From assembly GCA_037447605.1 (NCBI GenBank), contig CM074818.1, positions 496,001 to 560,000 on the forward strand: a stretch of DNA of 64,000 nt, given 5' to 3'. Both the position numbers and the translations under genes were made by a program. This DNA is from Zygnema circumcarinatum SAG 698-1b. Lineage: Eukaryota > Plantae > Zygnematophyceae. The notes below the pieces were generated by a model. That model was given only the letters and a program-made list of their open reading frames with translations, did not search any database and was not told the DNA's origin. This document shows positions 26,915 to 37,934 of this stretch, piece after piece (positions within the stretch are counted from its first letter, which is position 1; every line of letters begins with the position of its first letter).

Positions 26915-27634
26915 GGCTGCCGAGGTTGGAGTTACAAATCAGGGTTAGGGTTTAGGGTTTAGGGTGCAAGGCTTAGGGTTAGGGATTAGGTTTAGGTGGT
27001 TAAAGAGTAAGACAATGGTTATGACCACAGTCAAGGCTGAGCTGAGATCCACAGTCATCAAATTAGGGTTAGCTGGAGTGCAGCAATGCTCCTTTTCTGC
27101 AAGCTTCGGATGCGTCCAGAATTAGGGTTCAGGGTCCAGGGTCGCACTGCGCTCGGCGCCCGGGAGGACGAAAGACTGAGGGCTTAAAATTAGGGTTAGC
27201 TTGCGGAAACTTTTGAGGGTTCAAATTCGTACGAGGATGCTCCGTACGGAAAGCGCGAAAATGCTTACAGTACAGAACGCGACGCCGACGTGGCGCCGAC
27301 TTGGCGTCTAGATAGTACAGGTGTGCCTTTAAACTCACTCCGGAGAGGTCGGCCAGCCAGGTCTTCAAACGACCCAATCACCGACCACCACGTGGTCGTG
27401 CGTGTGCGCCCATCGTACAAGTGAGATCCACGTGTCTCGTCTGCTCGTCGCCAGATCAACCGCACGTGCGAGAGATTAGATCAACAAAAGTTGGACTGTG
27501 TCAGCAAAAGTTGACCAAAGTTGCCCGTGCGAACGCGCCCTCTGGATGCCCCTGAACCCTCGCCCACCTAAACCATCCCCCCTTCAAGAACCCTTCCCCC
27601 CACCCCCCCACCCCTCCACCGCGCCGCCCTCCCC
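26915..27634. promoter_or_regulatory. Bidirectional promoter between UBP27 (-) and the amylase homolog (+)
   Basis: Seen: divergent ATGs 720 bp apart, TTAGGG tract at 26940-27000 and CACGTG motifs. Function inferred. Confidence 0.45.
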
Positions 27635-30600
27635 ATGGCGGCCATGGCCGCATCATGCCGCGCATGCCACCCATGCAGGCCATGTCGCCCCTCCCTCCCC
27701 GCATCCCTGAACCCTGCGCCCGCCCGCCTCGCCCTCGCCCCCAAAGCCCTGAACCCTTCCAAAGCCCTGAACCTCTCCTGCTCGGTCTCGCCCGATCCCC
27801 TCCCCTCATGGCGTCCCATCCCCCCCATCCCCCCCATGGCATCCCCCATGCCATCCATGCCCCCCATGCCTCCCATGGCCCCCATGGCGGTGCCCCCATC
27901 GGCCGCATACATCGCGGCCGCCCTGGCCAATGAGGGGAGCGCCGAGGCCCCCCTGGAAGCTTCCGAGGCGGGCCACGTGTCAGACGCAGCGACGGTCTGC
28001 GTGCTGCAGGCCTTTCCTGCGGCGCCACAGAAGGCGGGGGATGGCGCCACGTGGCACCAGCATGTGCGGGCCCACGTGGATGACCTCGTGGCCGTCGGAT
28101 TCACGGACGTGCTGCTGCCGCCCTGTGTGCAGGCTCTGGATGCCGAAGGTCCGTCAGGGATACAGGGTTTTGGAGGGTTTGGGGAGAGGGAGAGGGAGGG
28201 AGAGGCTGAGGGAGAGGGAGGGAGAGGCTGAGGGAGAGGGAGGGAGAGGGTGAGGGAGAGGGGGAGGAGTTTGGGGTTCTTGAGGGTTTGGGGAGAGGGA
28301 GAGGGAGAGGGAGGGAGAGGGGGAGGGAGAGGGAGGGATAGGGGGAGGGAGAGGGAGAGGGAGGGAGNNNNNNNNNNAGGGAGAGGGAGAGGGAGGGAGA
28401 GGGAGAGGGAGGGGGAGGGAGAAGGAGAGGGAGAGGGGGAGGGGTTTGGGATTTATGGTATTGGGTTTCGGCATGTTTAGTATTTTCAATTTTGTACTCC
28501 CGTGGTAAAACTTTGATTCTTCTTGTAACCCTTAAGCTTCTTAAAACCTTAAACCCTAAACCCTGAACCCTGAACCCTAAACTCTCATGTATGCATGTAT
28601 GCATGTCTGTGTGCATGCATGCCCCTCCCTCTGATTGCAGGTATGCAACCCTGAACCCTCCTGTGGGCTGCCAGGGTTTATGCCTTCCAAGTTCTATGAC
28701 CTCAATTCCGCGTACGGAACGGCCGCTCAACTGAAAGATCTGATCGACAATCTGCATGGAAACGGTCTGCGCGTGACGGCGGAAATCGTGCTGAATCGCC
28801 TACGTGGCAAGCAGCCATTGGGCCACGTGGCATGGAAGAGGGTGGGCGGGACGGTGGACGAGGTAGGGCTCCTCGCCGACCCTTTGCATGTCAGGACAGT
28901 TTTGCTGGCGTCAGCAAAACTGCTGAAAACAAACAAACCCAACAAACCCGCTGTAAAAGTGCTGACGTCAGCATATATCGCAGATTCGTAATTCCGTGCT
29001 TTTGGGGTGTATGGAGTCGGCATAGTTTTTGTTTAATTGTCTTTTCGGGACTTTTTTTTTGGCTTCTTAAGGGATTCGGGATTTGGGGTTTTCTGTTTTC
29101 GATATTTTAATTTTCGGTTTCAGATTTTGGGGTTTTAATTTTTTTTCATTATTTTCTATTGAATTGTGTGAGTTTTCAGGAAATCGATTGGGGAGATTGG
29201 GTTGATCGAGTCGGAGAATTCGATAGCACCTCTTCAAGGGGGGGCGAGATGGATGAGGAATTTGGAGAGCTCCCAGCCGTAGATCACGCGGATCCAACGG
29301 TTCAGAGTGATGCCAAAGGATGGCTCATGTGGATGAAGAAGGATGTTGGGTTTGATGTGAGACCCCAATGACCTTTTTTTCAAAAAACAAAAAAAAGTCA
29401 AAAAAAGCCTTTGTATTTGCATGGAAAAGTTTGCTTATTTATGTTATTGGGTTGCGATTTATTTTTTTGGGGTAGCTTATTAGGGGATAGGGGGGGGGGC
29501 GCGGGGGGAGGGAGGGCTTTTGTCGTATTCAGAATTCTGCAATACCTGGCTGATGGGTTTGTCTTTTCTTGTCTGGTTTTTGGTTTCTGGTTTTTGGGTT
29601 TTGAGTTTTTGGTTTGTTGAATAGGGATGGTGCTTTGACCTCGCGAAGCTGTTTGATCCGACTGCTGTTTATGTGTAAGGCGACTTTTTTTTCCTCATTT
29701 AGTGAACCCTTTGTAGGATTCTAAATGCTTTACAAAGTTAGAATTGATTCTATCGATCTCAGGTGTAACATGTTAGTCGTGGTCTTGCTTCTCTGCGACA
29801 ATGAAATGATTGGCCTTAGTTATTTGAGGCTCTGCAGCTCCTGGGGAGGAAGGGAGGGAGGAGGGGAGTGAAAGGGGAGGGGGGAGAGGGGAGGGAGGGG
29901 ATGGGGATGGGGGAGGGGAGAGGGGGGATGGGGGAGGGGAGAGGGGGAGAGGGGGAGGGGATGAAGAGGGGAGGGAGAGGGGATGGAGAGGGGAGGGGGG
30001 GGGAGGGGAGAGGAGAGGGGGGGAGAGGGGAGGNNNNNNNNNNGGGAGAGGGGAGAGGGGGAGCAGAGGGAGGGGAATAGGGAAGGGAGAGAGGGGAGGA
30101 GGAGAGGGGGAGGGTGAGAGGAGAGGGGGAGAAGGGAGAAGGAAGGGGGAGAGGGGAGGGGTGAGAGGGGGAGGGGAGTGTAGGGGGAGAGGGAAGGGAG
30201 AGGGGTGGGTGATGGGAGGGGAGGGAGGAGGGAGGGAGAGGGGAGGGAGAGGAGAGAGGAGGGAGGAGGGAGGGGAGAGGGAGGGGAGAGAGGAGGGAGA
30301 GATCGTCTATTTCTGAAAGAAGCTCGGCAATTTTTTCCATTGAAAGAGTGTCTAGAAGTCTTCAAATGGGTGAGGTTGTATGGGAGCTGGTGATGAATAT
30401 AAACGTCGCTATTCTAGAGAGTGCAGGCCTTGGCTTGTGCTTCTGCAGACGCACAAAATATAAAAGCAACACTTCTGAAGCTCCAATTGCATCCTGGTCA
30501 TATCTGGGGAGAAGAGAGAAAGGGAGAGAAGAAGAGTGTCAGAAGATTGCAGTTTTAGATTCACTCCACCTCCCTCCTTCCCTCCCTCTCTCCCTCCCTC

Positions 30601-33530
30601 CCTGCCTGCCGATGATGAGCACTTTGTATCTATGTGTGTCAACGGAGCTCTATGGAGCGATGATCTCATCTCAAATCTTCTCTCTGAGGCATTGGCTCCC
30701 TTAAAAAAAAACAAAAAATGAACCTGGGTTTTTGGGTTATACTAATCTAGACTCTTTTTTTTTTTGCTTCTACCCCCTTTTTTTTTTTTCTTTGCAAGCT
30801 GCACATGCTCAGATTCTTACGAAGTTTTAGATCCCTCTATCCGACAATTTTTCTTTTTGATGTGAGGTTCTACTTTCTACTATTGCAGATATTGCGATGC
30901 AACATCGCCGGGATTAGCGATTGGAGATGTTTGGAATCCCATGAGATATAACGGCACAGATTTGGAATATAATCAAGGTAGCTTGCTTGTTTGGGGGGAG
31001 GGGGGAGGGGACATTAGGGTTTACTCAGTTTCTTGGAAAATATAAATAAGTAAAGAAAGGAAGAGATAGAATAGAAGTGAGCCCTACTTACTTCCTACAT
31101 TTTTCTTTATTGATTTCCAGATCAGCATCGGCAGGAATTGGTAAACTGGGTTAAGGGAACGCGTGAGAAGGCAATGGCTCTCGACTACACCACAAAGGTA
31201 TCCCACTCTCTCACTCTCTCCCGCTCTCCCTCTCTCTCCCACTCTCCCAACTCCCCGCTCTCTGCGCTCTCTCGCACTCCCTCTCTCTCACACTCTCCAG
31301 CTCTCCCTCTCTCTCCCGCTCTCTCTCGCTCTCTCCCACTTCTTGAGGTGGTAGGCAGGGGCCTACCATTGCCCTCCCCCTACCATCCGAGATTTCTACA
31401 ACGCACTCCCTTCGTTGTGGGACTACTCCATCCTCTTCCTCCACCGGGCCAACCCCTCCCCCCTCCTCTTGATCCCCTTCCTCTTCTCTTTCTGCCCTCC
31501 AACCCCGCCTCCCCCTCCCTCTCCCCCTCCTTTCCATTTGCCCCTCCCTCTCCCTCCCTCCCCCTCCCCCTCTTCCTCCCCGCTCCTCCCTCTTCTCGAC
31601 CCTCCTCCCCTTCTCTTGCTTCCGTTCCTCCCCGGCTCCCTTTTCCTCTCCCGGTCACCCTCGTCATCTTGTGCTCCCCCCTCCCTCTCTCCCTCCCTCC
31701 CTCCCCCCCTCTCTCTTCCTCCTCCCACTTCTCGACCCTCCTCCCCTTCTCTTTCTGCCCTCCCTCCCCGCCTCCCTTTTCCTCTCCCGCTCACCCTCTT
31801 CATCTTGTGCTCCCCCCTCCCTCTCCCTCTCCCTCCCTCCCCCTCTCACTCTCTCTTCCTCCTCTCTCTCTCTTCCTCCTCCCTCTTCTCGACCCTCCCC
31901 TTCTCTTTTTTCTCTCCCTCCCCGCCTCCCTTTTCCTTTCCTGCTCACCCTCTTCATCTTGTGCTCCCCCCCTCCCTCTCCCTCTTCCTCCCTCCCCCTC
32001 CCCCTCTCTCTTCCTCCTTTCTCTCTCTTCCTCCTCCCTCTTCTCGACCCTCCCCTTCTCTTTCTGCCCTCCCTCCCCGCCTCCCTTTTCCTTTCCTGCT
32101 CACCCTCTCCATCTTGTGCTCCCCCCCTCCCTCTCCCTCTCCCTCCCCCCTCCCTCCCTCTCCCTCCCCCGTGACGTGACGCAGGGCGTCCTCCAGCAGG
32201 CCGTCCTCCGGTCCGAGTATTGGCGGTTGGTGGACTCGGAGGGACGGCCCCCCGGCCTGCTCGGATGGTGGCCCTCCAAGGTGTGCCCTCAACCCTAAAA
32301 TTTCTTAAAAGAAAAAAAAAGAAGATGAACCCTGAACCCCGTAGAACCATCTTCATAAACCTGCAAAAAAAAATTGACAGTAATTTGAAAAGTCTTAAAT
32401 TTCGTAACGTCAAATAACCCTAGAAGTCCAGATATGCTAAATTTAGCAACCTGAAAAGTCGCAAAAAACTCTTTTTCTTTCCCCTCCTCCCACTTCCCCC
32501 CCCCCGCTTCCACTTACCCCCATTTTTTTTTGGATGGGGTTTGGAAAATAGGCTTTGACTTTTGTGGAGAATCGCGCGACTTCGGACCATTGGCCCTTTC
32601 CTTCCTGGGGTGTGCTTCAAGGGTGGGACAGCTGGCAGCTCCCTATTGGCTGGTCCTTTTTTATATCCTAATTTTTTTTATTTTTTTTTCCCCAAATCAC
32701 CTAAAACTTGAAGCTCTCCATAAAACTCGAAAGCAGGAAAAATAGAAAGTACTGAGATTAGTTTTTTTACATATTTTTTCTTGGATGGGGTACTAATGGG
32801 GGTTTGGATTTTTGGATCTTAATGCAGTTATTGCTATATTTTGACCCATCCTGGAACACCGTGTGTACTTTGGGAGCATGTTTATGACTGGAAACTTCGG
32901 GTACGACTCTCTCTCTCTCACTCTCTCCCTCCCTCTCTCTCGTTCTCTCCCTCTGTCCACTCGCTCTCGTCCCTCTCCTCTCCCTCACTTTCCTCACTCT
33001 CTCCCTCTCTCTCGTTCCCTCTCCCACCTTCCCTCGCTCTGAACCTTCTCCCCCCCTCCCCCCTCGCCTCTCCCTCTCCCCACTCCCACTCCCTCTCCCA
33101 CTTCCTCTCCCTCTCCCTCTCCACTCTTCATCCCCCCCTCCCCCACTCCTGCCCCCCTTACCCCCCCTCCCTTCCCCTCCTCTCCTGCCCTCTCCGCCCT
33201 CCTCCCTACCACCCTCTCCCTCCCTCAAATTTTCCTCCCTTTGAGCTTTTTTTTTGGTATCATTAATCTACTAACGGCTCACTTAAAGTTAGATGTAATT
33301 CTAGTTCAAAATCTAAATTGTAATCTATTTTTTGGCCCTGCAGGATGTGATTGGGAGCCTCATTGCTGCTCGAAAGCGCGGAAAAATTCACTCTCGATCT
33401 CAGATCCGGATTCTCGCCTGCCAATCAGATCTCTACGTCGCACGTGTGGGGTCAAATGTTGACTCTGAGGAGTTCCATGGGCTCCTTGTAAAGATGGGGC
33501 CCAGTTTTGACATGCGTGGAACGGAGCCAG
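27635..33530 (+). CDS. Alpha-amylase (GH13, plant type) homolog with degenerate catalytic residues; exons 27635-28148, 28675-28862, 29180-29356, 29625-29674, 30889-30977, 31121-31197, 32185-32280, 32552-32622, 32828-32900, 33344-33530; last exon probably in gap 33937-33946
   Basis: Seen: GFTDVLLPP, EGFMPSKFYDLNSAYG, WLMWMKKDVGFDGWCFD, HRQELVNWV, DYTTKGVLQQAV, WRLVDSEGRPPGLLGWWPSK, WPFP, GYCYILTHPGTPC, DLYVA, LVKMGP. All ten junctions are phase-compatible with no stops. Confidence 0.92.
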
Positions 33531-33946
33531 GTGAGCATGGAGACATGCTGGGGTGGTAGAGGGAGGGAGAGGAGAGAGAGAGAAGGGGATGAAGGAGAGG
33601 GGAGAAGGGAGAAGGGAGAAGGGCGGGGAGGGCGGGAGAGATGGAGGGGGTGGGAGGGGGCGGAATGGGGAGAGGAGTGGGGGAGGGGATGGGGAGGGGA
33701 GAGGGAGTGGGAGAGGGAGTGGGAGAGGAAGAGAGAAAGGGGAGAGGGGAGAGGAGAGTGGGGAGAGGGGAGTGGGGCGAGGGGCGAGGGGAGAGCGGAG
33801 AGCGAGGGAGGGTAGGCGAGGGGACGAGAGAGAGTGAGAAAAGAGAGAACTAAGATAAGGGAGAAAGAAAGAGCGGAGAGAGGAGGGAAGAGAGTGAGAA
33901 AACGAGGCGGGTAGGGCCGAGTGAAGCGAGCGACTCNNNNNNNNNN

Positions 33947-36900
33947 AGACATGAGATGGCATGTGCGCATGTTCCATAGGATTAGAACGGCATGGGACAT
34001 TCATTTTAGGTTTTTTTTTTTTATTTTTTGATTATTTAAAAAATCTCCTTATGGGTTATGCAAGTTGGGTTTGATCTAATGGGGTACCGTACCACAGAAG
34101 TCTTTTTAGCAAAAATGATAATAATTTTTTATGAAAGTTCAAAGAATATATGAATCCAAATCTGAAGTCACACTCGCAAATGGCTTTGACTATACTTAGG
34201 GCTAAAAAAGAAAATTGTTCTCCGAGGACGCTCCTTGAAATGCATTCCGAAAGTCGACTGTTTTCAGCTCGAATCGGAGCCGGAATTTGGCGCGCCGTGC
34301 ATGTCGTAGGCGGCCCTTGGGAGCGTATCGGACGGTTCTAATTTAAAACTCTAGCAACGTTAATTCGAGCAGATCTACTTCACAGGCAAGCGGATGACAG
34401 GCATAGCCGTAGGCTGTACGGTCCAGTCCTACACAATAAGGAAAGGCGACTCGTGTGCGAAGTTAGTGAAATTGTACTTCGGAAACAAGCAGTCGACATA
34501 CAAAGCCTTGAACAACAAGTTTGTTTGAACAGGAACCTTCGTGTGGGCCGTGTGATTTGCATTCCCTTAAATGCCATAGTGCAGTAAATGGAACTCGTCA
34601 CTCCCTCCCTCCCTCCCTCCCTCCCTCCCTCCCATATCCCAACATGGGTAGACAGGTACCCCAACAAAAACAAATGCACTTCTATTCCACAATCCTCGTG
34701 GTTCTCCCCCCTCCCTGTGGACTGGTGTTTGGAATTTGGGGAATGTGTGCGTAGCATCCCCTTATTATAATGCTACTGGGCAGTCGCTAGGAGGCCTTAG
34801 CCCCCCTCCAGATGTTGAAGAGTTGTTCTGCTTTGAAGGTTTAATATCAGAAATACACCCGAATATAAGATTGTTTTTCAATCTCACTGGTCAGCCCCCC
34901 CCTAAATTAAATTCCAGGACCCTCCCGCTATTGGCCCGAGAAGCTAAGAAAAAAACATCCTTTCTTCACCTTTTCTTTTAGTGCATCAAACAAGCAAGAA
35001 ATAGTATATCGATGGGAAATTAGGTTAGCCCGACCTGACAGCTTGGCAGAAGTCGCCACGTGGGTGTCTCTCATTAAAAACCTCGAATCGCGTGCTGACA
35101 CGTGGCGAGCGCTGGCGAACCAGCCAGCCAGTAATCCAATGGTTGCAACCATTCGATTTCCTGGCAACCATTAGGTTGCCAACCATTGGCTTTCCAACCA
35201 TTGGCCCTCCAACCATTGCACATCCAATGGCTGCCCAACGGTTTCCGACCACGCTCAACAGCAAGCCGCTGTAATGACGCGGAGCGTGCTTGGGAGCGTG
35301 TGACGCGGAACGCGACAGAAACACCTTCCGCGCTGAGCCAATGGGGGTGCGCCCATTCCTGTTACGAAATCCGTTAACATTTCTCTGTTTGACGGGTTCG
35401 GTGTTCCATGAGCGGAATCTACGAAACCAGTCATAACGTGCCAGGTGGAAGATCTCCGTACTGTGACCAGTATCTGGGTCTTGGCGTCTTCAAATCTGCC
35501 AAGGCCCCGGTCACAGGTCCCTTTCTCGGCCGCTCGTCTCCGCCGCCGCGTCCTCGCCCTGACGGCCGCCCTTGCTCCCGCCCTCTGCCCGCTGGCTGCT
35601 CGGCTGGGCTGGGCTTCGGGTTTTTGGGGTTCAGGGTGAAGGGCTTCGCGTTTTAAGGGTTCAGGGTGAAAGGATTCGCGTTTTTACGGTTCAGTGTCAA
35701 GAGCTTTACGTTTTTAGGGTTCAGGGTCAAAGGGTTCAGGGTCAAGGGTTCAGGATCAAGGGTCAAGGGTTTAGGGTCGAGGATCAAGGTTTCAGGGTCA
35801 AGGGCTTCGGATTCTTAAGGTTCAGGGTCAAGGATTCAGGGTTTAGGGTTTGAGTGCCCCGAGCGACCGCTGTTCTCAGGACGTGCTGTCGAAGTCGCGA
35901 TGGCGGGCCGGCGGGCTGCGGAGGATGGGCGGCGGNNNNNNNNNNAGACATGAGATGGCATGTGCGCATGTTCCATAGGATTAGAACGGCATGGGACATT
36001 CATTTTAGGTTTTTTTTTTTTATTTTTTGATTATTTAAAAAATCTCCTTATGGGTTATGCAAGTTGGGTTTGATCTAATGGGGTACCGTACCACAGAAGT
36101 CTTTTTAGCAAAAATGATAATAATTTTTTATGAAAGTTCAAAGAATATATGAATCCAAATCTGAAGTCACACTCGCAAATGGCTTTGACTATACTTAGGG
36201 CTAAAAAAGAAAATTGTTCTCCGAGGACGCTCCTTGAAATGCATTCCGAAAGTCGACTGTTTTCAGCTCGAATCGGAGCCGGAATTTGGCGCGCCGTGCA
36301 TGTCGTAGGCGGCCCTTGGGAGCGTATCGGACGGTTCTAATTTAAAACTCTAGCAACGTTAATTCGAGCAGATCTACTTCACAGGCAAGCGGATGACAGG
36401 CATAGCCGTAGGCTGTACGGTCCAGTCCTACACAATAAGGAAAGGCGACTCGTGTGCGAAGTTAGTGAAATTGTACTTCGGAAACAAGCAGTCGACATAC
36501 AAAGCCTTGAACAACAAGTTTGTTTGAACAGGAACCTTCGTGTGGGCCGTGTGATTTGCATTCCCTTAAATGCCATAGTGCAGTAAATGGAACTCGTCAC
36601 TCCCTCCCTCCCTCCCTCCCTCCCTCCCTCCCATATCCCAACATGGGTAGACAGGTACCCCAACAAAAACAAATGCACTTCTATTCCACAATCCTCGTGG
36701 TTCTCCCCCCTCCCTGTGGACTGGTGTTTGGAATTTGGGGAATGTGTGCGTAGCATCCCCTTATTATAATGCTACTGGGCAGTCGCTAGGAGGCCTTAGC
36801 CCCCCTCCAGATGTTGAAGAGTTGTTCTGCTTTGAAGGTTTAATATCAGAAATACACCCGAATATAAGATTGTTTTTCAATCTCACTGGTCAGCCCCCCC

Positions 36901-37934
36901 CTAAATTAAATTCCAGGACCCTCCCGCTATTGGCCCGAGAAGCTAAGAAAAAAACATCCTTTCTTCACCTTTTCTTTTAGTGCATCAAACAAGCAAGAAA
37001 TAGTATATCGATGGGAAATTAGGTTAGCCCGACCTGACAGCTTGGCAGAAGTCGCCACGTGGGTGTCTCTCATTAAAAACCTCGAATCGCGTGCTGACAC
37101 GTGGCGAGCGCTGGCGAACCAGCCAGCCAGTAATCCAATGGTTGCAACCATTCGATTTCCTGGCAACCATTAGGTTGCCAACCATTGGCTTTCCAACCAT
37201 TGGCCCTCCAACCATTGCACATCCAATGGCTGCCCAACGGTTTCCGACCACGCTCAACAGCAAGCCGCTGTAATGACGCGGAGCGTGCTTGGGAGCGTGT
37301 GACGCGGAACGCGACAGAAACACCTTCCGCGCTGAGCCAATGGGGGTGCGCCCATTCCTGTTACGAAATCCGTTAACATTTCTCTGTTTGACGGGTTCGG
37401 TGTTCCATGAGCGGAATCTACGAAACCAGTCATAACGTGCCAGGTGGAAGATCTCCGTACTGTGACCAGTATCTGGGTCTTGGCGTCTTCAAATCTGCCA
37501 AGGCCCCGGTCACAGGTCCCTTTCTCGGCCGCTCGTCTCCGCCGCCGCGTCCTCGCCCTGACGGCCGCCCTTGCTCCCGCCCTCTGCCCGCTGGCTGCTC
37601 GGCTGGGCTGGGCTTCGGGTTTTTGGGGTTCAGGGTGAAGGGCTTCGCGTTTTAAGGGTTCAGGGTGAAAGGATTCGCGTTTTTACGGTTCAGTGTCAAG
37701 AGCTTTACGTTTTTAGGGTTCAGGGTCAAAGGGTTCAGGGTCAAGGGTTCAGGATCAAGGGTCAAGGGTTTAGGGTCGAGGATCAAGGTTTCAGGGTCAA
37801 GGGCTTCGGATTCTTAAGGTTCAGGGTCAAGGATTCAGGGTTTAGGGTTTGAGTGCCCCGAGCGACCGCTGTTCTCAGGACGTGCTGTCGAAGTCGCGAT
37901 GGCGGGCCGGCGGGCTGCGGAGGATGGGCGGCGG
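33947..37934. repeat. Apparently identical 1989-bp tandem duplication (33947-35935 = 35946-37934), each copy preceded by a 10-N gap; probable scaffolding artefact
   Basis: Seen: constant offset of 1999, identical ORFs in both copies, and copy 1 ends exactly at a gap. Confidence 0.9.
37134..37234. promoter_or_regulatory. ~15-bp-period CAACCATT(GG) array (CCAAT-box-like) upstream of the kinase gene
   Basis: Seen: five CAACCATT units flanked by two CCAAT motifs, ~170 bp upstream of the ATG at 37407 (duplicated at 35135-35235). Function inferred. Confidence 0.35.

What the first reader, a model, noticed from the sequence alone, without database searches (positions are those of the whole stretch)
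27635..33530. Intact plastid-targeted alpha-amylase homolog with degenerate catalytic machinery (candidate starch pseudoenzyme)
Seen: in a 10-exon, stop-free gene, the four GH13 conserved regions read EIVLNRL (canonical DxVxNH; His->Arg), GWCFDLAK (GWRFDFAKG; nucleophile Asp at 29637 kept, Arg->Cys), AIGDVW (AV[AG]ExW; acid/base Glu->Asp at 30926) and FVENRA (FV[DE]NHD; His->Arg and third catalytic Asp->Ala at 32573-32578). Surrounding structural motifs are well conserved, and the N-terminus is Ala/Ser/Arg-rich like a transit peptide. Known: GH13 amylases need the Asp-Glu-Asp triad, and non-catalytic regulators exist among beta-amylases (BAM4/BAM9). Inference: a maintained, catalytically dead alpha-amylase acting as a glucan-binding or scaffold regulator of starch turnover. 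I know of no described plant alpha-amylase class like this.
Basis: partly seen in the sequence, partly recalled or inferred. Interest (0 to 1): 0.78.

Follow-up and report, generated by a model that had tools for sequence, protein, structure and literature searches.

The report
Conserved alpha-amylase look-alike with altered active site
This alga has an intact gene for a starch-cutting enzyme look-alike whose cutting residues are changed the same way in relatives from other streptophyte algae and a liverwort, so it is an old, maintained and apparently undescribed protein class that probably no longer cuts starch.

Summary
A plant-type (GH13_6) alpha-amylase homolog lies at 27635-33530 (+): ten exons, all GT-AG, no stop. 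It reads EIVLNR, GWCFDLAK, AIGDVW and FVENRA at conserved regions I-IV. Both flagged gaps lie inside GA-rich introns at intron positions shared with orthologs, and no residues are missing there.

New here: the gene is not a lone oddity. It belongs to a clade with 100/100 support, together with Spirogloea, Mesotaenium, Closterium, Klebsormidium and the liverwort Calypogeia. All members share His->Arg (region I), Arg->Cys/Phe/Ser (II), Glu->Asp (III), Asp->Ser/Thr/Ala (IV) and Tyr->Phe, and all keep the nucleophile Asp. All 112 other amylases fetched keep the triad.

The clade is under purifying selection: Closterium dN/dS is 0.12-0.15, and the window protein keeps 89% of clade-invariant columns and 15/15 signature columns.

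Caveats: orthologs have an 11th exon of about 20 residues that is absent from the window. The assembly breaks at gap 33937-33946, which is followed by an exactly duplicated 2-kb block. Expression evidence is indirect. Loss of activity, plastid targeting and any regulatory role remain inference.

No paper describing this class was found, and this scan had not noted it before.

The parts
27635..28148 (+). Exon 1. An N-terminal extension of about 122 residues (Ala/Pro/Ser-rich, first acidic residue at position 54), then the start of the barrel (VLQAF...LPPC...LDAE).
   Evidence: Homology to the Spirogloea ortholog starts at 27992. The start codon is unverified.
28368..28377 (.). Assembly gap inside intron 1 (28149-28674), within GA-rich microsatellite.
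   Evidence: There is no indel against orthologs at the exon 1/2 junction, and the intron position is shared with Closterium and Klebsormidium.
28675..28862 (+). Exon 2. It holds Phe in place of barley AMY1 Tyr52 (GFMP) and conserved region I, E-I-V-L-N-R, at 28782-28799 (Asp->Glu, His->Arg).
29180..29356 (+). Exon 3: the remodelled domain B segment and the VDH motif.
   Evidence: The equivalent stretch of the Spirogloea model has pLDDT below 50.
29625..29674 (+). Exon 4: conserved region II, G-W-C-F-D-L-A-K. Arg->Cys; the nucleophile Asp (29637-29639) and the Lys are kept.
30034..30043 (.). Assembly gap inside intron 4 (29675-30888), within GA-rich microsatellite.
30889..30977 (+). Exon 5: conserved region III, A-I-G-D-V-W. 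The acid/base Glu is replaced by Asp at 30926-30928.
31121..31197 (+). Exon 6 (DQHRQELVNW...DYTTK).
32185..32280 (+). Exon 7. It carries the Trp-Trp pair (32266-32271) equivalent to barley AMY1 surface site SBS1, W278/W279.
32552..32622 (+). Exon 8: conserved region IV, F-V-E-N-R-A (32561-32578). His->Arg and Asp->Ala, plus a 3-residue deletion relative to the other clade members.
32828..32900 (+). Exon 9 (YCYILTHPGTPCV...).
33344..33530 (+). Exon 10: most of the C-terminal beta-sheet domain. Lys and Asp of the barley 'sugar tongs' site are kept and Tyr380 is Phe. It ends at a donor that is conserved in orthologs.
   Evidence: Pfam PF07821 at 2e-9.
33531..33946 (.). Start of intron 10, running into gap 33937-33946. 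The expected 11th exon is missing beyond it. Reading through the donor gives a stop at 33557-33559.
33947..37934 (.). Two exact copies of a 1989-bp block (33947-35935 and 35946-37934), separated and preceded by gaps. This is probably a contig placed twice, and it marks the break that hides the gene's 3' end.

Best explanation
The window encodes a real, selectively maintained member of an old and apparently undescribed clade of plant-type (GH13_6) alpha-amylase homologs. The clade is found in streptophyte algae and at least one liverwort.

The clade keeps the amylase fold. Its -1 subsite and catalytic centre, however, are changed in a fixed way: His122->Arg, Arg204->Cys/Phe/Ser, Glu230->Asp, Asp297->Ser/Thr/Ala (TAA numbering) and barley Tyr52->Phe. 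The nucleophile Asp206 is kept.

Most likely the protein no longer hydrolyses alpha-1,4-glucan. Instead it probably acts as a non-catalytic glucan-binding or partner-binding protein of starch turnover, probably in the plastid, much as ISA2 does for isoamylase and BAM4/BAM9 do for beta-amylase.

Shown: gene structure, clade membership, the substitutions, purifying selection and fold.

Inferred: loss of activity, glucan binding, plastid location and a regulatory role.
For: - Gene model: a ten-exon open frame with all GT-AG introns, recovered exon by exon by the Spirogloea ortholog. All ten intron positions are shared with Closterium and nine with Klebsormidium.
- Homology: the best solved relatives are barley and rice alpha-amylases, and exon 10 matches PF07821.
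- Clade: 100/100 support, with a stem of 0.71 changes per column.
- Key positions: the clade reads R, C/F/S, D, D, S/T/A and F where 111-112 of the 112 other amylases read H, R, D, E, D and Y.
- Selection: the Closterium pair gives dN 0.11-0.12, dS 0.78-0.95 and dN/dS 0.12-0.15.
- The window copy keeps 118 of 132 columns invariant in the four other lineages, which is within the 81-96% range of the other members, and all 15 clade signature columns.
- Fold: the Spirogloea ortholog model has pLDDT above 90 over the barrel and domain C, and a TM-score of 0.86 to barley AMY1.
- Binding sites: the SBS1 Trp-Trp is kept, as are Lys and Asp of SBS2.
- N-terminus: every member has a non-hydrophobic extension of 41-164 residues.
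- Expression (indirect): runs labelled as DNA hold 1.00 of the words of 28675-29674. One run holds 0.33, where I calculate 0.335 for exons only. Thirteen runs from three studies hold 0.56-0.71, values that match retention of single introns.
Against: - No activity, binding or localisation data exist.
- The nucleophile Asp and an Asp at the acid/base position are invariant across the clade. That is not what a purely dead site predicts: in ISA2 the nucleophile itself varies (PMC12510319).
- A GH13 amylase lacking the third Asp is active (PMC5347038).
- SBS1 is lost in Closterium (GLLP). SBS2 Tyr380 is Phe (Met in Klebsormidium), and His395 is Ser in orthologs.
- The window copy lacks its last exon in the assembly.
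- The window copy is the most changed member at region IV, with NRA and a 3-residue deletion.
- The RNA evidence is arithmetic on shares of words, and the run types are not on record.
- No targeting predictor was available.
Confidence: 0.55

Rival explanations
1. It is a neofunctionalised enzyme. The clade is catalytically active with a re-engineered centre (the nucleophile Asp plus a shorter Asp acid/base, and Arg in place of His). It acts on a different glucan or substrate, or carries out transglycosylation rather than starch endo-hydrolysis.
For: Asp206 and the Asp at position 230 are invariant in all nine clade sequences, and His122->Arg and Tyr52->Phe are also fixed. Fixed replacements suggest selection for a new site geometry rather than decay. 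The BmaN1 group shows that GH13 can work with an aberrant triad (PMC5347038). Domain B, which shapes the cleft, is remodelled.
Against: Four to five residues that contact the -1 glucose are changed at once. Two of them vary within the clade: Arg204 is C, F or S, and Asp297 is S, T or A. That variation is more typical of released constraint. The window copy also lost His296 and changed the loop that follows.
Confidence: 0.22
2. It is still an ordinary but weak alpha-amylase. The substitutions lower the activity without abolishing it, and the protein degrades starch like its paralogs.
For: The fold, the nucleophile and a carboxylate at the acid/base position are retained. Databases name the Klebsormidium member 'alpha amylase'.
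Against: All 112 other amylases fetched keep Glu230 and Asp297, and 111 of them keep His122 and Arg204, so these residues are under strong constraint wherever the activity is used. The clade sits on a long stem and scores poorly against the Pfam catalytic-domain model, at 20 bits against a cut-off of 22 in Spirogloea and Closterium.
Confidence: 0.08
3. The window copy itself is a young pseudogene of this clade. The last exon is truly lost, region IV is decaying further, and the gene is no longer functional in this species.
For: Exon 11 is not found in 64 kb. Region IV reads NRA with a 3-residue deletion where all other members read NH[ST]TGS. The terminal branch is 0.70, against 0.45-0.56 for the Spirogloea, Mesotaenium and Klebsormidium members. 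No direct RNA evidence was obtained.
Against: There is no stop or frameshift in 1.5 kb, and all ten introns have GT-AG ends. The copy keeps 89% of invariant columns and 15/15 signature columns. The missing exon coincides with an assembly gap followed by a duplicated block with 0 mismatches, which points to a misassembly. The shares of words in probable RNA runs fit spliced transcripts.
Confidence: 0.08
4. The unusual residues are an assembly or sequencing artefact.
For: The region holds gaps and misassembled repeats.
Against: The same substitutions occur in independent genomes of at least seven other species. Six runs labelled DNA and further runs from eight studies in all hold the stretch that contains regions I and II.
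Confidence: 0.01

Closest known systems
Plant GH13_6 alpha-amylases (barley AMY1/AMY2, rice AmyI-1; Arabidopsis AMY1-3)
   Same: About 40% identity over about 410 columns. The domain order is the same: barrel A, domain B, C-terminal beta-sheet domain. Conserved regions I-IV are collinear and the SBS1 Trp-Trp is kept. The model of the Spirogloea ortholog has a TM-score of 0.86 to barley AMY1.
   Different: The acid/base Glu is Asp and the transition-state Asp is Ala (Ser/Thr in orthologs). His122, Arg204, (in this copy) His296 and Tyr52 are replaced. Domain B is remodelled. There is a 9-residue insert in domain C. The group forms a separate clade with 100/100 support.
ISA2, the non-catalytic GH13 paralog of isoamylase ISA1
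   Same: It is a GH13 starch-enzyme paralog with substitutions at catalytic positions that has been kept by selection over deep time (PMC12510319).
   Different: ISA2 belongs to the isoamylase branch and is found throughout Chloroplastida. It varies at 4 of 5 key residues, including the nucleophile, and is known to bind ISA1. In this clade the nucleophile is kept, the distribution seen is streptophyte algae plus a liverwort, and no partner is known.
BAM4 and BAM9, non-catalytic beta-amylase-like regulators
   Same: The logic is the same: a plastid amylase paralog without canonical catalysis that regulates starch degradation. BAM9 binds and activates AMY3 (PMC8774843, PMC12046210).
   Different: They have a different fold and family (GH14). 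For them function and partners have been shown by experiment; here nothing has been tested.
BmaN1 group of GH13 alpha-amylases with an aberrant triad
   Same: They are GH13 members that lack the third catalytic Asp (PMC5347038).
   Different: They are bacterial and carry a single change (Asp->His). The Glu, Arg and His residues are otherwise kept, and the enzyme was shown to be active. Here five or more active-site residues differ.
AMY1-AMY6 subfamilies of green-plant alpha-amylases (Ju et al. 2019)
   Same: They belong to the same gene family and have the same domain plan (PMC6426938).
   Different: That survey of 78 species reports the active site and SBS1 as well conserved in all six subfamilies, and its text never mentions Klebsormidium. 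None of its subfamilies has the substitutions seen here.

Membership tests
GH13 subfamily 6 plant-type alpha-amylase (EC 3.2.1.1) | Fold: (beta/alpha)8 barrel with domain B and the C-terminal beta-sheet domain (PF00128 plus PF07821). | tested here: met
   PF07821 at 2e-9 on exon 10 and a weak PF00128 hit on exon 2. The best PDB sequence hits are barley and rice amylases. The ortholog model has a TM-score of 0.86 to 1HT6.
GH13 subfamily 6 plant-type alpha-amylase (EC 3.2.1.1) | Catalytic triad Asp206 / Glu230 / Asp297 (TAA numbering). | tested here: not met
   Asp is kept, Glu->Asp and Asp->Ala. All 112 other amylases fetched keep all three.
GH13 subfamily 6 plant-type alpha-amylase (EC 3.2.1.1) | Invariant -1 subsite residues His122, Arg204 and His296. 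| tested here: not met
   They read Arg, Cys and Arg in the window protein.
GH13 subfamily 6 plant-type alpha-amylase (EC 3.2.1.1) | Placement inside the plant/green-algal amylase tree. | tested here: met
   It falls inside the plant-type radiation, as a separate clade with 100/100 support beside the AMY1-type group (87/78).
GH13 subfamily 6 plant-type alpha-amylase (EC 3.2.1.1) | Endo-hydrolysis of alpha-1,4-glucan. | not testable with these tools
   This needs a recombinant protein assay.
The Asp-variant amylase-like clade (Spirogloea, Mesotaenium, Closterium, Klebsormidium, Calypogeia); unnamed | The shared substitution set (NR, W-C/F/S-FD, GDVW/ADVW, N-H-S/T, QGF) and 15 clade-specific columns. 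| tested here: met
   15 of 15 signature columns and 118 of 132 invariant columns are kept. At region IV the window copy differs further, reading NRA.
The Asp-variant amylase-like clade (Spirogloea, Mesotaenium, Closterium, Klebsormidium, Calypogeia); unnamed | Shared intron positions and 11-exon structure. | tested here: inconclusive
   All ten intron positions match Closterium and nine match Klebsormidium. The 11th exon is absent from the assembled window, beyond a gap.
Starch-metabolism pseudoenzymes (kind: ISA2, BAM4, BAM9) | A paralog of an active starch enzyme with catalytic residues replaced. | tested here: met
Starch-metabolism pseudoenzymes (kind: ISA2, BAM4, BAM9) | Maintained by purifying selection. 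| tested here: met
   dN/dS is 0.12-0.15 between two Closterium species. Conservation holds across lineages, though dS is saturated for the window gene itself.
Starch-metabolism pseudoenzymes (kind: ISA2, BAM4, BAM9) | No catalytic activity, and a regulatory or partner-binding role. | not testable with these tools
   This needs biochemistry and genetics.
Starch-metabolism pseudoenzymes (kind: ISA2, BAM4, BAM9) | Plastid localisation. | tested here: inconclusive
   All members have a non-hydrophobic N-terminal extension, which is disordered in the model. No targeting predictor or experiment was available.

The most novel reading that the evidence does not exclude
The clade is not a dead enzyme. 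It is an alpha-amylase derivative, old within the streptophytes, with a rebuilt Asp-Asp centre (plus Arg for His and Phe for Tyr) that performs a new reaction or senses a glucan or sugar ligand in the plastid. It arose before Klebsormidiophyceae and the lineage leading to land plants diverged, persists in some bryophytes, and was lost in vascular plants.
Probability: 0.22. Interest if true: 0.8.

Novelty: new variant of a known kind. Interest (0 to 1): 0.62.

Why it matters
Non-catalytic paralogs (ISA2, BAM4, BAM9, LSF1) have turned out to be key regulators of starch metabolism, yet I found no counterpart described for alpha-amylase.

This clade would be that counterpart. It is old, being shared by Klebsormidium, the conjugating algae and a liverwort. 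It is under purifying selection. It was absent from the seed-plant and other vascular-plant proteins returned by the searches.

It therefore gives a concrete, testable candidate for how the closest algal relatives of land plants control starch turnover. It is also a natural experiment on what a GH13 active site with Glu->Asp and Asp->Ser can still do.

A practical point: databases currently name members 'alpha-amylase', which may misstate their function.

Tried and rejected
1. Word search with the stop-free frame 31114-32295, restricted to exon 7, to get round the length filter. It found nothing and cost one search.

2. Read laying on 27600-33590 to see splice joints and the residues in reads.
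   - Local scripts on the closed machine did read the whole window file: regex, and tblastn of ortholog proteins against the window.

3. Search for the 11th exon, by tblastn with five ortholog C-termini and by a motif regex on both strands. It gave only chance hits, for example 44718.

4. My recollection that the 'sugar tongs' Tyr380 lies in the DLYVA motif was wrong. Chain numbering shows that residue is Tyr364. Tyr380 aligns with Phe in GPSFD.

5. Chlorokybus P0141 scored like a clade member but is two canonical amylases fused in one gene model.

6. Synteny with the GDT1 gene that lies upstream in Closterium: no GDT1 homolog is in the window.

7. dN/dS for the window gene against orthologs: dS is saturated (2.4 or undefined), so only the Closterium pair is informative.

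8. Short exons gave no usable Pfam or PDB hits on their own.

9. The spliced 516-residue protein could not be passed to the remote tools, because it has no reference. The Spirogloea ortholog was therefore folded instead.
Full report
**What is there.** The region holds a ten-exon gene on the + strand. The exons are 27635-28148, 28675-28862, 29180-29356, 29625-29674, 30889-30977, 31121-31197, 32185-32280, 32552-32622, 32828-32900 and 33344-33530.
- Every intron starts with GT and ends with AG, and the joined frame is open.
- Exon 2 aligns to rice and barley alpha-amylase structures at E about 1e-8.
- Exon 7 aligns to barley AMY1 residues 253-282.
- Exon 10 matches the plant amylase C-terminal domain PF07821 at 2e-9.
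- A tblastn of the Spirogloea ortholog against the window finds the ten exons in order and nothing else amylase-like.

**The gaps.** The two gaps flagged by the program, 28368-28377 and 30034-30043, lie in introns 1 and 4, inside (GGGAGA)n-like microsatellite.
- The exons on either side join in phase.
- The protein shows no insertion or deletion against seven orthologs at those junctions.
- Closterium and Klebsormidium orthologs have introns at the same alignment columns.
- The gaps therefore do not affect the coding sequence.

| Region | Window reads | Canonical | Change |
|---|---|---|---|
| I | EIVLNR | DIVINH | Asp->Glu, His->Arg |
| II | GWCFDLAK | GWRFDFAK | Arg->Cys; nucleophile Asp at 29637-29639 kept |
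| III | AIGDVW | AVGEIW-type | acid/base Glu->Asp at 30926-30928 |
| IV | FVENRA | FVDNHD | His->Arg, Asp->Ala at 32573-32578 |

In addition, the Tyr that stacks on the -1 glucose in barley (QGYMP) is Phe.

**It is a family, not an accident.** A HMMER search with exon 10 against 1.8 billion representative proteins gave 15 hits. One was a 518-residue Spirogloea protein. Word searches from that protein, and from a profile of the clade, returned several hundred amylases.
- Nine sequences share the unusual pattern: the window protein, Spirogloea, Mesotaenium, four Closterium species, Klebsormidium nitens and the liverwort Calypogeia fissa. The last sits on a 34-Mb scaffold, so contamination is unlikely.
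- All read Arg for His122 (the partial Closterium NIES-65 sequence lacks this region), Cys/Phe/Ser for Arg204, Asp for Glu230 and Phe for Tyr52. Those covering region IV read Ser/Thr/Ala for Asp297. All keep the nucleophile Asp.
- All 112 other amylases in the set keep the triad, and 111 of 112 keep each of His122, Arg204 and Tyr52.
- A maximum-likelihood tree puts the eight full or near-full sequences in one clade with 100/100 support on a stem of 0.71 changes per column. The clade sits inside the plant-type radiation.

**It is maintained.**
- Two Closterium species give dN 0.11-0.12, dS 0.78-0.95 and dN/dS 0.12-0.15 over 531 codons.
- For the window gene dS is saturated, so I used conservation instead. 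It keeps 118 of 132 columns (89%) that are invariant in the four other lineages, within the 81-96% range of the other members. It also keeps all 15 columns that separate the clade from canonical amylases.
- Together with the intact frame and splice sites, this argues against a decaying pseudogene.

**Fold.** The Spirogloea ortholog modelled with a 41-sequence alignment gives pLDDT above 90 for the barrel and domain C.
- It gives pLDDT below 50 for the first 100 residues and for residues 205-247 in domain B.
- Its best structural matches are barley AMY1/AMY2 and rice AmyI-1, with a TM-score of 0.86 by target and 40% identity.
- The catalytic-domain Pfam model scores only 20 bits (cut-off 22) on the Spirogloea and Closterium members, against 50 bits for rice.

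**Binding sites.** Barley AMY1 binds starch granules through SBS1 (W278, W279) and the 'sugar tongs' SBS2 (Y380, H395, with K375, D381 and others) (PMC5735674).
- The window protein keeps the Trp-Trp pair.
- In SBS2 it keeps Lys and Asp but has Phe for Tyr380.
- Closterium has lost the Trp-Trp pair, and orthologs have Ser for His395.
- Glucan binding is therefore plausible but not assured.

**N-terminus.** All members carry a 41-164-residue extension before the barrel that is not a hydrophobic signal peptide.
- In the window protein it is Ala/Pro/Ser-rich with no acidic residue before position 54.
- Part of it is encoded by low-complexity and telomere-like repeats.
- This fits a transit peptide but was not tested, and the start codon is unverified.

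- Indirectly, for 28675-29674 (exon 2 to exon 4) the six runs labelled DNA hold 1.00 of the sampled words.
- One run guessed as RNA holds 0.33, and I calculate 0.335 for words lying wholly in exons.
- Thirteen runs from three studies, with assemblies of 34-51 million letters, hold 0.56-0.71. I calculate 0.69 for intron 2 retained and 0.64 for intron 3 retained.
- This suggests spliced transcripts but does not prove them.

**The 3' end.** In Closterium and Klebsormidium an intron follows the codon equivalent to 33530, and a last exon of 19-23 residues ends the protein.
- No such exon exists in the window.
- About 400 bases into intron 10 the assembly has gap 33937-33946.
- The gap is followed by a 1989-bp block that recurs with 0 mismatches after the next gap, the signature of a contig placed twice.
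- The exon is most likely lost in this break. A true truncation, with a read-through stop at 33557-33559, cannot be excluded.

**Interpretation.** Five residues that contact the -1 glucose or carry out catalysis are changed, so canonical hydrolysis is unlikely. The closest functional parallels are the non-catalytic ISA2 (PMC12510319) and BAM9, which activates AMY3 (PMC8774843, PMC12046210).
- Two facts keep an enzymatic reading alive. The nucleophile Asp and the Asp at the acid/base position are invariant across the clade. And a GH13 group lacking the third Asp is active (PMC5347038).
- I put about 0.55 on a non-catalytic binding or regulatory protein, 0.22 on a new activity, 0.08 on a weak ordinary amylase, 0.08 on a young pseudogene in this species, and 0.01 on an artefact.

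**Novelty.** Seven literature searches found no description of such a clade.
- The 2019 family survey defines six subfamilies with a well-conserved active site and never mentions Klebsormidium (PMC6426938).
- The library searched lacks most subscription journals, so this is not proof of absence.
- Earlier notes of this scan identify the genome as a conjugating green alga and record a different, bacterial-type amylase elsewhere in it. They do not mention this clade.

Noticed in passing
window 33947-35935 and 35946-37934: A 1989-bp block occurs twice with 0 mismatches, each copy directly after a 10-N gap. This is probably one contig placed twice by scaffolding.
   Followed up: yes
window 46102 and 47763: The sequence right after gap 47753-47762 recurs exactly at 46102. 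The sequence before that gap recurs at 49361 and 49575. This is another gap-linked duplication.
   Followed up: partly
window 28149-28674, 29675-30888, 31198-32184, 32901-33343, 33531-33936: Five introns of this gene (1, 4, 6, 9 and 10) are filled with long GA-rich or CT-rich microsatellite. Telomere-like CCCTAAA/CCCTGAA units occur in intron 1 (about 28548-28585), in exon 1 and upstream of the gene.
   Followed up: no
L001 1-11358 and L002 3001-19268 (Closterium): In two Closterium species a GDT1-family (PF01169) gene lies directly upstream of the amylase-like gene. In one annotation (P0017, 800 aa) the two are fused into a single model. No GDT1 homolog is in this window.
   Followed up: partly
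P0141 (Chlorokybus atmophyticus, 976 aa): This gene model contains two complete canonical alpha-amylase domains in tandem. It is either a fused annotation of tandem genes or a true two-domain protein.
   Followed up: partly
P0099 (Oxalis oulophora, 425 aa): This AMY2-type amylase reads DFCFDSQKG at region II (Arg204->Cys, and the motif is otherwise disturbed) while it keeps Glu and Asp. It is the only exception among the 112 other amylases.
   Followed up: no
P0009-P0013 (ENA, Logan and JGI metagenome contigs): These unnamed fragments have C-terminal domains that most resemble the liverwort member of the clade. They may come from further bryophytes.
   Followed up: no
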